NCBI RefSeq assembly: GCF_016432865.1
Contig: NC_067399.1
Coordinates: forward strand, 498,542,001 to 498,606,000
Source of the DNA: Antechinus flavipes
Taxonomy: Eukaryota
DNA: 64,000 nt
Direction of reading: 5' to 3'
Below are positions 6,501 to 24,022 of the stretch, in pieces (the stretch's first letter is position 1; the number at the start of each line of letters is the position of its first letter). The position numbers and the translations under genes were made by a program. The notes under the pieces are model-generated. The model saw nothing but the letters and a program-made list of their open reading frames with translations. It did no database searches and was not told where the DNA came from.

Positions 6501-9207
6501 GTAGCAGGAAGAGGTGCTGATTCTAGCTAATGCAACCACTCTTGAGTACAGTTCTTTCTTACTTACTAGCTCACCATCCTCTTCCTCCTCCTTTTCTTCT
6601 TCTTTCTCTTCCTCTTCTTTCTCACATAAGAATGATGATGATAATTATAATGATAATAATTATGGTAATTGTAATACAGCTCTTTCTTACAGCCCTCCAT
6701 CCTCTTCTCCTCCTCTTCCTCTTTTTCTTCCTCCTCTTCCTCACATAAAAATGATTATAATTGCAATAATGATAATAATGATGATGATAATGGTAATAAC
6801 AATGGGAATAACAATGCTAGTGTTTATGTAGAATTTTAAAGTTTGCAAAGTTATTTGCAAATAATATCTTACTTGATCCTCACAACAACCCTAGAAAATA
6901 GGTGTTTTATTAGCCTCAATTTCCAGGTACAGAAACTGAGTTTGAAAGAGTTTAAATGACTTGCCAAGGGTCACACAGCTAGGAAGTTTCTGAGACAGGA
7001 TTAGAACTCAGGGTCTTGTTACTTCCAAGTTCGGCATTTTATTAGTGTAGGGGGAAGGGATAAAATGGATAGAAAGCCAGTTCCTCATAGTACTCTGTTC
7101 CTGGATCCCCAGGAACAGGATAAAGATCTTGAAGAGGCAATTGAGTAGCCAGAATTCAGAGGAGAAGATTCTGCTAAGGGAGTTGGAAAAGGAGAGGGAT
7201 AATCGGCAAAGTCTAGAGGTTTTGCTGACCAAAGTCACTTGCCACCTTCAGGACTTGCTAAAGGTGAGTATACACACACTTGCTCAAGATGTGGTCCATC
7301 AATACTAAGATCCAGAAGAGGGAAAATGTTCAATCAGAAGTGTATAGTTACCTGCCCATAGACTATAGATAATCAATGAGTAAGAAATGGGATACTAAGT
7401 AATGGGCAGGAGACCCAAAGAATATGAGGTGAAGCCGTCCTTTAAACAAAATCAATTTACAACCACAGCTTCTCCCAGCACTCTGCCATGGACAAAGAGC
7501 TCTTACATCCTTGAACTCATTTAACTCTCACCATAATGGGGTAGAAACAGAAGCTCAGCAAGGTCTGAATTCTATTTTCATCTTTGCCATCAACTGTATG
7601 ACTCTGAACAAGTTATTTCATGTCTAGAATCACTGAATGCCAGAAGTGGAAGGAGCCTTAGGGACTATCCAAGTATAGCGTCCCCATTTTGCAGATTGAG
7701 AAATTGAGTCCCAGAAACAGGGAGGGATTCAGCCCATGTCACAAAGCATATCATGCCCCACCTTTTGGCCTCAGGTTCCCCACGGGCCACTGTTGAAATC
7801 CTTACAAAGTGATAAATCAGTTGCCTAATTTCGCCACAAAGAAATAGTCTTTGTCCATGCAGGACTAGAGGATGCTAATCCAAGCACTCAAAATGGTAAA
7901 TTGCTGTGTGTGAGATGGCTGGGTACTAAGTTTGCTGTGATACTCACCAAGACCTGTGCAGGTAGAGGAGGTGGAGAAAGAGAGTTGTCGGGAGTTTATC
8001 CGGCCTCCAGACATTTGTCTTCCTCCTCTCCTCGCCCCCAGGCACGCCCTGAGAAAACTGAGGCTGGCGAGGTAGACCTGTTATTCCAGTTAGGGAAGAA
8101 GGAGATGCTGCGGCAGCTGCTGACTATGCTGAACAAGGCTGTGGCTATGGAGCCCAGTATCCCTGAGTTCGTGCCTCCCCCAATTAAGTCTCCCTCTCTT
8201 CAGTCCCTCCTGACAAGTATTGAGGAGAGGTGAGTGGTGATCTGACTGGGAATCATCTTCAAGGAGGAGAGATTTAGTTTGGTTTTGGAAAATTGGGGAA
8301 GAAAGGAGTCCTTTAGGTGGTCCCCTCAACCCTCTCTTTCGTCTCAGTTCTCAGGAGCCTGAGCCCTCCCCTCTGTTGGAGCAACTGGCCGAGATTCAGC
8401 CTTACAGACTTGGGGACTTGGGCCTGGTGCCCCGTCCACCCTCCGTTGCAGAGGATAGCCAAAGTACTGAAACATTCAAAAAACATAGGCTTGTTAAAGC
8501 CTTCAGCAACCCTGAGGTGAGGACATGAGGGAGTCAGGGTGCGGGCTGTTATTGTTGCTGGCGGTCCTTGGCTCTTGAACATGACACCTTGACATCAGGG
8601 AGGGGATGCCTGACATGCAGGTGAATTGGATTTAGGTGAGGGAGGCTGGACAAGGTCACTGCCTCACTTCTCTCCCCAAAGCCATCTGGGTCCAGTGGTC
8701 AGATGTAGATCAGGACCACTGGAGATGGCTCTGGATACAATAGAAGAACTAAGGTCTTCAACAGGTCTCAGTCTGACTGAGACAACTACCCATTTAGTGT
8801 TTAAGACTAGGTAGCAACTGAAGCAAAGAATCTTCTCTTTCACTCAGTCAAAAAAAACCAAACCCTAATCTAAATAAATAAATAAATCGGAGAGGGGAAG
8901 ACTCTCAGGATTTCTGGCCAAATGATTGCTATTTATATGCAATCTGAGTCAATCAGGACCCAACAATGATCAAATGGGGCTTGGCCTGAGTGTATGCAAG
9001 GACAAAAAGGGAGGACTCTCCCAGGATCATCTCTTTTCTGATATATGGAAGGGATGGGATAAAGAGGGCAGAGGATGGAGCTCAGACCTTTCCTTTCCCT
9101 GAATTTTTCTTTTCCAGATTCCAAGCCCTCGAATATTGAGCGGGGTCAAGCAGGTCAGCTTGCCAGCATTCCACCTGAACCCCAATTGGGAGGGACAGCA
9201 GGAATAG
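597..9207 (+). CDS. CFAP157: Cilia- and flagella-associated protein 157, upstream tandem paralog (copy A), 9 coding exons, 522 aa
   Basis: Exons 597-742, 1773-2044, 3404-3557, 4040-4307, 5962-6092, 7113-7263, 8042-8229, 8348-8516, 9118-9207. All are bounded by AG/GT, phases are consistent, and the total is 1569 nt with no internal stop. Peptides [37 protein letters not shown] and [13 protein letters not shown] match CFAP157 (C9orf117) as I recall it. Confidence 0.93.
866..1030 (+). mobile_element. MIR/CORE-SINE remnant in CFAP157 copy A intron 1
   Basis: gaggcctgggtgttaatcctagct..agcttccccatctgtaaaa; an orthologous copy lies at 15539-15710. Confidence 0.7.
2320..2430 (-). mobile_element. Mariner transposase C-terminal fossil
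   Basis: The minus strand resembles the mariner terminal segment ALKAIPKEEFQKCF..WNKC..SQGNYF (ggctctgaaggcaatcc..ttccagaaat..ctggaataa..ctcagagggaactacttt). Confidence 0.55.
6552..6825. repeat. Compound low-complexity tract: two copies of a (TCC/TTC)n-CTCACATAA-(ATG/ATA)n unit
   Basis: Directly visible. Confidence 0.85.
6850..7030 (-). mobile_element. MIR
   Basis: cctcacaacaaccctag..gaaactgag..tgacttgccaagggtcacacagctag. Confidence 0.75.

Positions 9208-24022: not shown

What the first reader, a model, noticed from the sequence alone, without database searches (positions are those of the whole stretch)
8348..23712. Complementary retention of the ancestral exon-8 motifs between the CFAP157 paralogs (subfunctionalisation signature)
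Seen: copy A exon 8 reads [40 protein letters not shown] (GDLGLVPR at 8412-8435). Copy B reads [43 protein letters not shown] (23629-23691). From memory, human has [43 protein letters not shown]. So copy A kept the first motif (8/8) and lost the second, while copy B lost the first (2/8) and kept the second (11/21, in register). Both exons are 169 nt, but the PY anchor is shifted by 3 codons, implying compensating indels. Inference: reciprocal degeneration (the duplication-degeneration-complementation model) at the level of protein motifs, with two interaction sites of one ancestral protein split between two genes.
Basis: partly seen in the sequence, partly recalled or inferred. Interest (0 to 1): 0.75.

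Follow-up and report, generated by a model that had tools for sequence, protein, structure and literature searches.

The report
Marsupial CFAP157 twins split tail motifs
Two side-by-side copies of the cilia and sperm-tail gene CFAP157 in a marsupial each keep one of the two conserved short motifs that the single ancestral protein carried; the pattern is real, shared by all marsupials examined and tidy, but it is an example of a known kind of evolution after gene duplication and its functional meaning is untested.

Summary
The window matches Antechinus flavipes. It holds two intact 9-exon CFAP157 genes in tandem, A at 597-9207 and B at 15270-24022, followed by PTRH1 on the other strand.

- **Motif pattern in the window:** A exon 8 encodes GDLGLVPR and lacks the second motif. 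B exon 8 has TGLTTTFR in its place and keeps [21 protein letters not shown].
- **Both motifs are ancestral:** they occur together in platypus, eutherians, 24 of 25 amphibians, coelacanth and elephant shark. Motif 1 reaches insects and ctenophores.
- **The pattern is old:** all 10 A-type and all 11 B-type marsupial orthologues seen, American and Australian, show it, so it predates crown marsupials.
- **Both genes are functional:** dN/dS against Tasmanian devil is 0.23 for A and 0.17 for B. B is spliced in RNA contigs.
- **Correction:** B exon 8 ends at 23694 (151 nt) in RNA and in RefSeq, not at 23712. "169 nt in both" and "compensating indels" do not hold.

The subfunctionalisation reading is plausible but not shown. 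Motif 1 was also lost in single-copy genes of reptiles and moles. The motifs' partners are unknown. Neutral and adaptive routes cannot be separated here.

The scan's note s1-211342 records the same tandem duplication on this same stretch.

It is a new member of a known kind, of moderate interest.

The parts
597..9207 (+). CFAP157 copy A. It has 9 coding exons (597-742, 1773-2044, 3404-3557, 4040-4307, 5962-6092, 7113-7263, 8042-8229, 8348-8516, 9118-9207) and encodes 522 aa.
   Evidence: All junctions are AG/GT and there is no stop. It is 95% identical to Sarcophilus 'CFAP157-like' P0157. dN/dS against Sarcophilus is 0.23.
8348..8516 (+). Copy A exon 8 (169 nt)
   Evidence: The borders match the protein models of 10 marsupial species.
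8412..8435 (+). Motif 1, GDLGLVPR, intact in copy A
   Evidence: It is identical in 9 of 10 A-type orthologues; koala has H for R. The same motif occurs in platypus, eutherians, amphibians, fishes, a locust and a ctenophore.
8436..8504 (+). Position of the lost motif 2 in copy A ([23 protein letters not shown]), 3 residues shorter than the ancestral stretch
   Evidence: Alignments. It is the least conserved part of A-type proteins, at the 2nd percentile.
15270..24022 (+). CFAP157 copy B. It has 9 coding exons (15270-15415, 16331-16602, 19788-19941, 20330-20597, 21015-21145, 21587-21737, 22942-23123, 23544-23694, 23840-24022) and encodes 545 aa.
   Evidence: One search gives the model. RNA joints support every junction from exon 3 to exon 9. 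All exon pieces match Antechinus flavipes P0372 exactly. dN/dS against Sarcophilus is 0.17.
23544..23694 (+). Copy B exon 8 as used in RNA (151 nt).
   Evidence: Joints 23123|23544 and 23694|23840. RefSeq models of Antechinus, Sarcophilus and Sminthopsis read ..RNFK|VSLP... An unspliced contig over 23667-23867 also exists.
23599..23622 (+). Degraded motif 1 in copy B (TGLTTTFR)
   Evidence: All B-type orthologues have related degraded forms: SGLSTVFR, SGLSAMFR/Q, SSLNAMFQ, SSISAMFQ.
23629..23691 (+). Motif 2, [21 protein letters not shown], kept in copy B
   Evidence: It is nearly invariant in the B-type orthologues. The core LSxTTRLG is found in shark, coelacanth, amphibians and turtles.
520..584 (+). 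Proximal promoter block of copy A, nearly identical to that of copy B
   Evidence: The block AGCTTCCTTAGCAACAGCTTG.CCTTTTAAAGGGGCAGCAG is invariant in both copies and in Sarcophilus.
15163..15241 (+). Proximal promoter block of copy B
24262..25980 (-). PTRH1 coding exons, tail to tail with copy B
   Evidence: Pfam PF01195, E 1e-13. The order is the same in Sarcophilus.

Best explanation
**Shown.**
- CFAP157 was duplicated in tandem, in its usual place between STXBP1 and PTRH1. This happened after the split from monotremes and before the last common ancestor of living marsupials.
- The ancestral protein was a long coiled coil followed by a disordered tail. The tail carried two conserved short motifs. 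The first is [10 protein letters not shown], found across animals. The second has the core LS.TTRLG, found across jawed vertebrates, with a mammalian extension HIPPNP.D.
- Before the marsupial radiation, copy A lost the second motif through a 3-residue deletion and substitutions, and kept the first. Copy B lost the first motif through substitutions in register, and kept the second.
- Both copies kept the C-terminal LP element and an almost identical core promoter.
- Both have stayed intact and under purifying selection since. B is transcribed and spliced.

**Inferred.**
- The two motifs are separate docking sites for different partners.
- The ancestral tail functions are now divided between two proteins, so both genes are needed (subfunctionalisation at the protein level).
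- The division could work in two ways: A/A and B/B dimers with separate partners, or an A/B dimer that carries one copy of each motif.
For: - **Gene models:** both are intact.
- **Ancestral state:** both motifs are present in platypus, about 100 eutherians, 24 of 25 amphibians, coelacanth and Callorhinchus. Motif 1 is present in sturgeon, a locust and a ctenophore.
- **Complementary pattern:** it holds in 10 A-type and 11 B-type orthologues, including Monodelphis, Gracilinanus and Dromiciops.
- **Tree:** A and B are each 100/100 clades inside therians, with stems of 0.49 and 0.53.
- **Differential constraint on the motifs:**
- **Selection:** dN/dS is 0.23 (A) and 0.17 (B). B exon 8 has 1 change in 150 nt against a gene-wide dS of 0.09.
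- **RNA:** spliced B contigs with exon depth of 200-500 against intron depth of about 10.
- **Structure:** the tail is predicted disordered, pLDDT 37-54, with no secondary structure.
- **Gene order:** the same in Sarcophilus and Monodelphis.
- **Promoter:** the block is invariant between the copies.
Against: - Motif 1 has been lost or badly degraded in single-copy CFAP157 of turtles, crocodilians, squamates, tuatara and talpid moles. Its loss therefore does not require a back-up copy.
- No binding partner of either motif is known to me. The paper on mouse CFAP157 was not held.
- Expression of A was not shown directly. RNA runs held only 5-8% of the sampled words of the A stretch.
- A+B monophyly is weak (82/69). 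B+Eutheria is not rejected (p-AU 0.29), so a duplication just before the therian split with loss in eutherians remains possible.
- A complementary outcome has even odds if each copy simply lost one motif.
Confidence: 0.55

Rival explanations
1. Specialisation or new function. After duplication, each copy adapted to a different setting, for example the sperm flagellum versus multiciliated epithelia, or different stages of spermiogenesis. Each then shed the motif it did not need there. On this view the complementary pattern is a by-product of adaptation, not of neutral reciprocal decay.
For: - Both copies changed a great deal on the stem (0.49 and 0.53, against 0.31 for the eutherian stem).
- The coiled-coil exons 4-7 are only 33-44% identical between the copies.
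- A's replacement tail (..[14 protein letters not shown]..) and B's long acidic exon 9 are each conserved within their own group.
- Mouse CFAP157 is reported as expressed in ciliated tissues but required only in sperm (the title and statements of Weidemann et al. 2016, as cited in PMC5487853 and PMC11914644).
Against: - The core promoter is invariant between the copies, which argues against a gross regulatory split.
- No tissue-resolved expression data were available here.
- The positions of the lost motifs are among the least conserved parts of each protein. That looks like relaxation rather than a newly selected motif.
Confidence: 0.25
2. Coincidence of two independent losses. Each motif is dispensable in some lineages. 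The two copies happened to lose different ones, and both genes are retained for reasons unrelated to the tail, such as dosage or functions of the coiled coil.
For: - Single-copy genes also lost motif 1 in sauropsids and moles. Squamates have degraded motif 2 as well.
- With one loss per copy, a complementary outcome has even odds.
Against: - The kept motif is nearly invariant in each copy across all living marsupial lineages seen.
- B exon 8 is the most conserved exon of B.
- Platypus and nearly all eutherians keep both motifs.
Confidence: 0.15
3. One copy is a decaying pseudogene or an annotation artefact, so the missing motif is simply decay.
For: B lacks a motif that is conserved from ctenophores to mammals.
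Against: - Both have nine intact exons with canonical splice sites.
- dN/dS is 0.17-0.23.
- Intact orthologues exist in 10 to 11 species each.
- B is spliced in RNA contigs at every tested junction.
Confidence: 0.02

Closest known systems
Duplication-degeneration-complementation model (Force et al. 1999; from my own knowledge)
   Same: Two duplicates are retained, and each lacks a different ancestral sub-element. Both changed at similar rates.
   Different: The classical model partitions cis-regulatory modules. Here the core promoter is shared and the partitioned elements are short peptide motifs. Neither the neutrality of the losses nor the need for both sub-functions has been shown.
Partition of short linear motifs between paralogues after duplication (described for yeast whole-genome duplicates, Nguyen Ba et al. 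2014; from my own knowledge)
   Same: Conserved islands in a disordered region are kept in one paralogue and lost in the other.
   Different: This is a tandem pair in a mammal, with a clean one-for-one reciprocal split of only two motifs, fixed across a whole infraclass.
Single-copy mammalian CFAP157 (mouse: FOXJ1 target, CEP350 interactor, needed for sperm flagellum morphogenesis; cited in PMC5487853 and PMC11914644)
   Same: Same exon structure, coiled-coil body, genomic neighbours and promoter element.
   Different: The single-copy protein carries both tail motifs. Each marsupial copy carries one.
Aardvark CFAP157 and 'CFAP157-like' (P0210, P0266)
   Same: A lineage-specific duplicate of the same gene.
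   Different: It is a young pair (sister branches of 0.06 and 0.09) and both copies still carry both motifs.

Membership tests
CFAP157 gene family | Sequence homology over the coiled-coil body to annotated CFAP157 proteins | tested here: met
   The exon 2 search gave 170 hits, with full-length CFAP157 proteins at the top. Copy A is 95% identical to Sarcophilus CFAP157-like. Copy B matches Antechinus flavipes CFAP157-like exactly. No Pfam or PDB family exists for it.
CFAP157 gene family | Conserved position between STXBP1 and PTRH1 | tested here: met
   PTRH1 (PF01195) lies tail to tail with B. A Sec1-family gene lies upstream of A in Monodelphis. The order is the same in Sarcophilus.
CFAP157 gene family | C-terminal tail with both [10 protein letters not shown] and LS.TTRLG | tested here: not met
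   Each copy has only one of the two. Reptile and mole orthologues also lack motif 1, so this feature is typical of the family rather than obligatory.
Subfunctionalised duplicate pair (DDC sense) | Both duplicates retained, intact and under purifying selection | tested here: met
Subfunctionalised duplicate pair (DDC sense) | The ancestor had both sub-elements | tested here: met
   Platypus, eutherians, amphibians, coelacanth and shark have both.
Subfunctionalised duplicate pair (DDC sense) | Complementary loss, one sub-element per copy | tested here: met
Subfunctionalised duplicate pair (DDC sense) | Each sub-element has a distinct, needed function, so the two copies together equal the ancestor | not testable with these tools
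   The only indirect support is strong conservation of the kept motifs and their place in a disordered tail. Losses of motif 1 in single-copy lineages count against strict necessity.
Subfunctionalised duplicate pair (DDC sense) | The losses were neutral degenerative mutations | not tested
   This needs codon models on coding sequences from many marsupials. DNA was obtained for only one other species.

The most novel reading that the evidence does not exclude
The two marsupial proteins pair through their coiled coils into an obligate A/B dimer that carries one copy of each tail motif, so each gene has become dependent on the other. Alternatively, the motifs dock different partners, for example one at the basal body and one on microtubules. 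In that case the marsupial pair would act as natural separation-of-function versions of CFAP157 that could map what each motif does.
Probability: 0.2. Interest if true: 0.6.

Novelty: new member of a known kind. Interest (0 to 1): 0.45.

Why it matters
- **Two functional elements identified.** CFAP157 is needed for sperm flagellum formation in mouse, yet nothing I could reach says what its tail does. The comparison singles out two short, deeply conserved tail motifs as the likely functional elements.
- **They can be separated.** Evolution has separated the two motifs cleanly in marsupials.
- **A direct experiment follows.** Mouse alleles or rescue constructs that carry only one motif would test this, with the marsupial proteins as ready-made reagents.
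- **A textbook-clean case.** For students of gene duplication it is a tidy, old example of reciprocal motif loss, older than the marsupial radiation.
- **A caution comes with it.** The same motif has been lost in single-copy lineages, so complementarity alone does not prove subfunctionalisation.

Tried and rejected
- **Pfam and PDB.** Pfam scans of ten exon ORFs gave only weak coiled-coil noise. A PDB sequence search with exon 2 found nothing.
- **Profile from exon pieces.** I aligned the nine B exon pieces, as separate rows, to a full-length orthologue to make a profile. MAFFT stacked the pieces on top of each other, so the alignment (A1) was not used.
- **Key paper.** Weidemann et al. 2016 is not held, so I could not learn whether the tail has been mapped.
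- **Expression of A.** RNA runs held only 5-8% of the sampled words of the A stretch and come from relatives. That does not settle whether A is expressed. My single read-laying run went to B.
- **Hidden exons.** A search for alternative exons carrying the missing motifs, in all six frames of the window, found none.
- **Timing of the duplication.** The AU test could not place it relative to the eutherian split.
- **Pseudogene reading.** Rejected.
- **Gene conversion.** I considered it as the cause of the similar 5' ends and rejected it. Exon 2 is as similar to eutherians as to the paralogue, and the promoter block is also conserved in a raccoon dog model.
- **Rules observed.** The window contains no N. 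I used no human sequence or contig.

Full report
**What is in the sequence.**
- Comparison with full-length orthologues and inspection of splice sites gives two complete genes on the + strand.
- Each has nine coding exons, canonical AG/GT borders and no internal stop.
- Copy A runs from 597 to 9207 and encodes 522 aa. Copy B runs from 15270 to 24022.
- Exons 1-6 have the same lengths in both copies.
- PTRH1 lies on the minus strand at 24262-25980, tail to tail with B (Pfam PF01195).
- The window has no N.

**Source of the window.**
- All nine in-frame exon pieces of B are exact substrings of the RefSeq protein 'CFAP157-like' of Antechinus flavipes (P0372, 545 aa).
- Copy A is 95% identical to the Sarcophilus A-type protein.
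- The window is therefore from Antechinus flavipes or something nearly identical.
- Both genes are already annotated in public records as CFAP157-like.

**Correction to exon 8 of B.**
- Contigs of a run of a related species (X2) have exon depth of 200-500 against intron depth of about 10.
- They show joints at every junction of my B model from exon 3 to exon 9.
- The exon 8 to exon 9 joint is 23694|23840, not 23712|23840.
- The RefSeq models of Antechinus, Sarcophilus and Sminthopsis read ..RLRNFK|VSLP.. in the same way.
- An unspliced contig across intron 8 also exists.
- B exon 8 is thus 151 nt in the mRNA, and the residues VFTTPE are not in the main product.
- The donor at 23712 corresponds to the ancestral one, which A, eutherians and the Trichosurus model use.
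- The PY anchor is shifted because of independent deletions. A is 3 residues shorter inside motif 2 and about 1 shorter upstream. B is 4 shorter upstream. They are not compensating indels.

**Are both motifs ancestral?**
- Pfam and PDB left the protein open, so I used the one exhaustive protein search, with B exon 2 as query. Three word searches with full-length orthologues followed.
- Motif 1 ([10 protein letters not shown]) is present in:
  - platypus;
  - 84 of 103 eutherian proteins exactly, with most of the rest differing by one residue;
  - 24 of 25 amphibians;
  - coelacanth, elephant shark and sturgeon;
  - a locust and a ctenophore.
- The core of motif 2 (LS.TTRLG) is present in elephant shark, coelacanth, amphibians, turtles, platypus and eutherians.
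- Its extension HIPPNP.D is mammalian.
I did not use human sequence.

**Is the complementary pattern general in marsupials?**
- Ten A-type proteins all have GDLGLVP(R/H) and lack motif 2. They come from Sarcophilus, Macrotis, Dromiciops, Trichosurus, Notamacropus, Petaurus, Vombatus, Phascolarctos, Monodelphis and Gracilinanus.
- Eleven B-type proteins all have a degraded motif 1. They come from Antechinus, Sarcophilus, Sminthopsis, Dromiciops, Trichosurus, Notamacropus, Petaurus, Macrotis, Vombatus (partial), Monodelphis and Gracilinanus.
- The degraded forms of motif 1 are [33 protein letters not shown] and SSISAMFQ.
- Wherever the sequence reaches that far, the B-types keep an almost invariant motif 2.
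- No marsupial protein has both motifs.
- Within A-types, motif 1 lies at the 92nd percentile of window conservation and the motif 2 position at the 2nd percentile.
- Within B-types, motif 2 lies at the 85th percentile and the motif 1 position at the 24th.
- No other copy of either motif exists in any frame of the window.

**Age and mode of the duplication.**
- A maximum-likelihood tree of 35 proteins gives (platypus, (Eutheria, (A, B))). A, B and Eutheria each have 100/100 support.
- The join of A with B is weak (82/69). The stems are 0.49 (A), 0.53 (B) and 0.31 (Eutheria).
- An AU test does not reject B+Eutheria (p 0.29).
- The duplication therefore falls after the monotreme split and before crown marsupials. 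It cannot be placed more finely.
- The order STXBP1, A, B, PTRH1 holds in Monodelphis. The order A, B, PTRH1 holds in Sarcophilus.
- The aardvark has a separate, young duplicate with both motifs intact.

**Are both genes functional?**
- Exon-by-exon Nei-Gojobori counts against Sarcophilus DNA, summed without building a joined sequence, give:

| Copy | dS | dN | dN/dS |
|---|---|---|---|
| A | 0.104 | 0.024 | 0.23 |
| B | 0.088 | 0.015 | 0.17 |

- B exon 8 has a single change in 150 nt.
- B is spliced in RNA contigs.
- Direct RNA evidence for A was not obtained.

**Nature of the motifs.**
- An AlphaFold2 model of a eutherian protein, built with a 71-sequence alignment, shows helices at 62-253, 271-406 and 418-439.
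- The tail from 440 to the end has no structure and pLDDT of 37-54.
- Conserved islands in a disordered tail usually mark short linear binding motifs. That is an inference; no partner is known to me.
- Secondary sources report that mouse CFAP157 is a FOXJ1 target, interacts with CEP350 and is needed for sperm flagellum morphogenesis (PMC5487853, PMC11914644). The primary paper was not held.

**What limits the subfunctionalisation reading.**
- Single-copy CFAP157 has no motif 1 in 11 turtles, 2 crocodilians, 19 squamates and the tuatara. Three talpid moles have it badly degraded.
- Turtles keep motif 2, exactly as copy B does. Loss of motif 1 therefore does not need a back-up copy.
- If each copy lost one of two motifs at random, complementarity has even odds.
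- What does favour a real division of labour:
  - the strict conservation of each kept motif across all living marsupial lineages seen;
  - the equal stem lengths of the two copies;
  - the retention of both genes under purifying selection.
- The core promoter is invariant between the copies and between species. This points away from a regulatory split and towards the protein.

**Verdict.**
A neutral DDC route is only one way to reach it.
- It is a new and clean example of a known phenomenon, in genes that are already annotated. I found no paper that describes it.

Exons were used singly, by reference. Orthologous full-length proteins returned by the tools stood in for the whole proteins.

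Noticed in passing
window 520-584 and 15163-15241; L001:9920-10000; L002:2895-2975: Two proximal promoter blocks, GTT(A/G)CTATGTATAGA and AGCTTCCTTAGCAACAGCTTG(A/G)CCTTTTAAAGGGGCAGCAG, are invariant between paralogues that are otherwise about 45% identical as proteins, and also between Antechinus and Sarcophilus. TAGCAAC resembles an RFX X-box half-site. A raccoon dog protein model even translates through the block. A wider similar stretch, 514-1280 against 15157-15918 (66% identity), extends into intron 1.
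   Followed up: partly
proteins P0299-P0336, P0025, P0028, P0298: Single-copy CFAP157 of turtles, crocodilians, squamates and tuatara lacks the otherwise animal-wide GDLGLVPR motif. Turtles keep the LLSKTTRIG core. No bird appeared among the best 120 hits of an alligator query.
   Followed up: partly
proteins P0228, P0238, P0264: Three talpid moles (Galemys, Talpa, Condylura) have a badly degraded motif 1 in what appears to be a single-copy gene. Whales, some bats, tree shrew and hystricognath rodents show single-residue variants.
   Followed up: no
proteins P0210 and P0266: The aardvark has a recent lineage-specific CFAP157 duplicate. Both copies still carry both motifs.
   Followed up: partly
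window 23695-23839: Intron 8 of B is short and open in the exon 8 frame. An unspliced RNA contig spans it at about half the depth of the spliced form. Retention would read exon 9 in another frame. Some public models (Petaurus, Gracilinanus, an old Sarcophilus model) read through this intron.
   Followed up: partly
window 21934-21976: A short stretch in B intron 6 attracts many unrelated contigs with loose ends in all four runs. It is probably part of a dispersed repeat.
   Followed up: no
I did not examine it.
   Followed up: no
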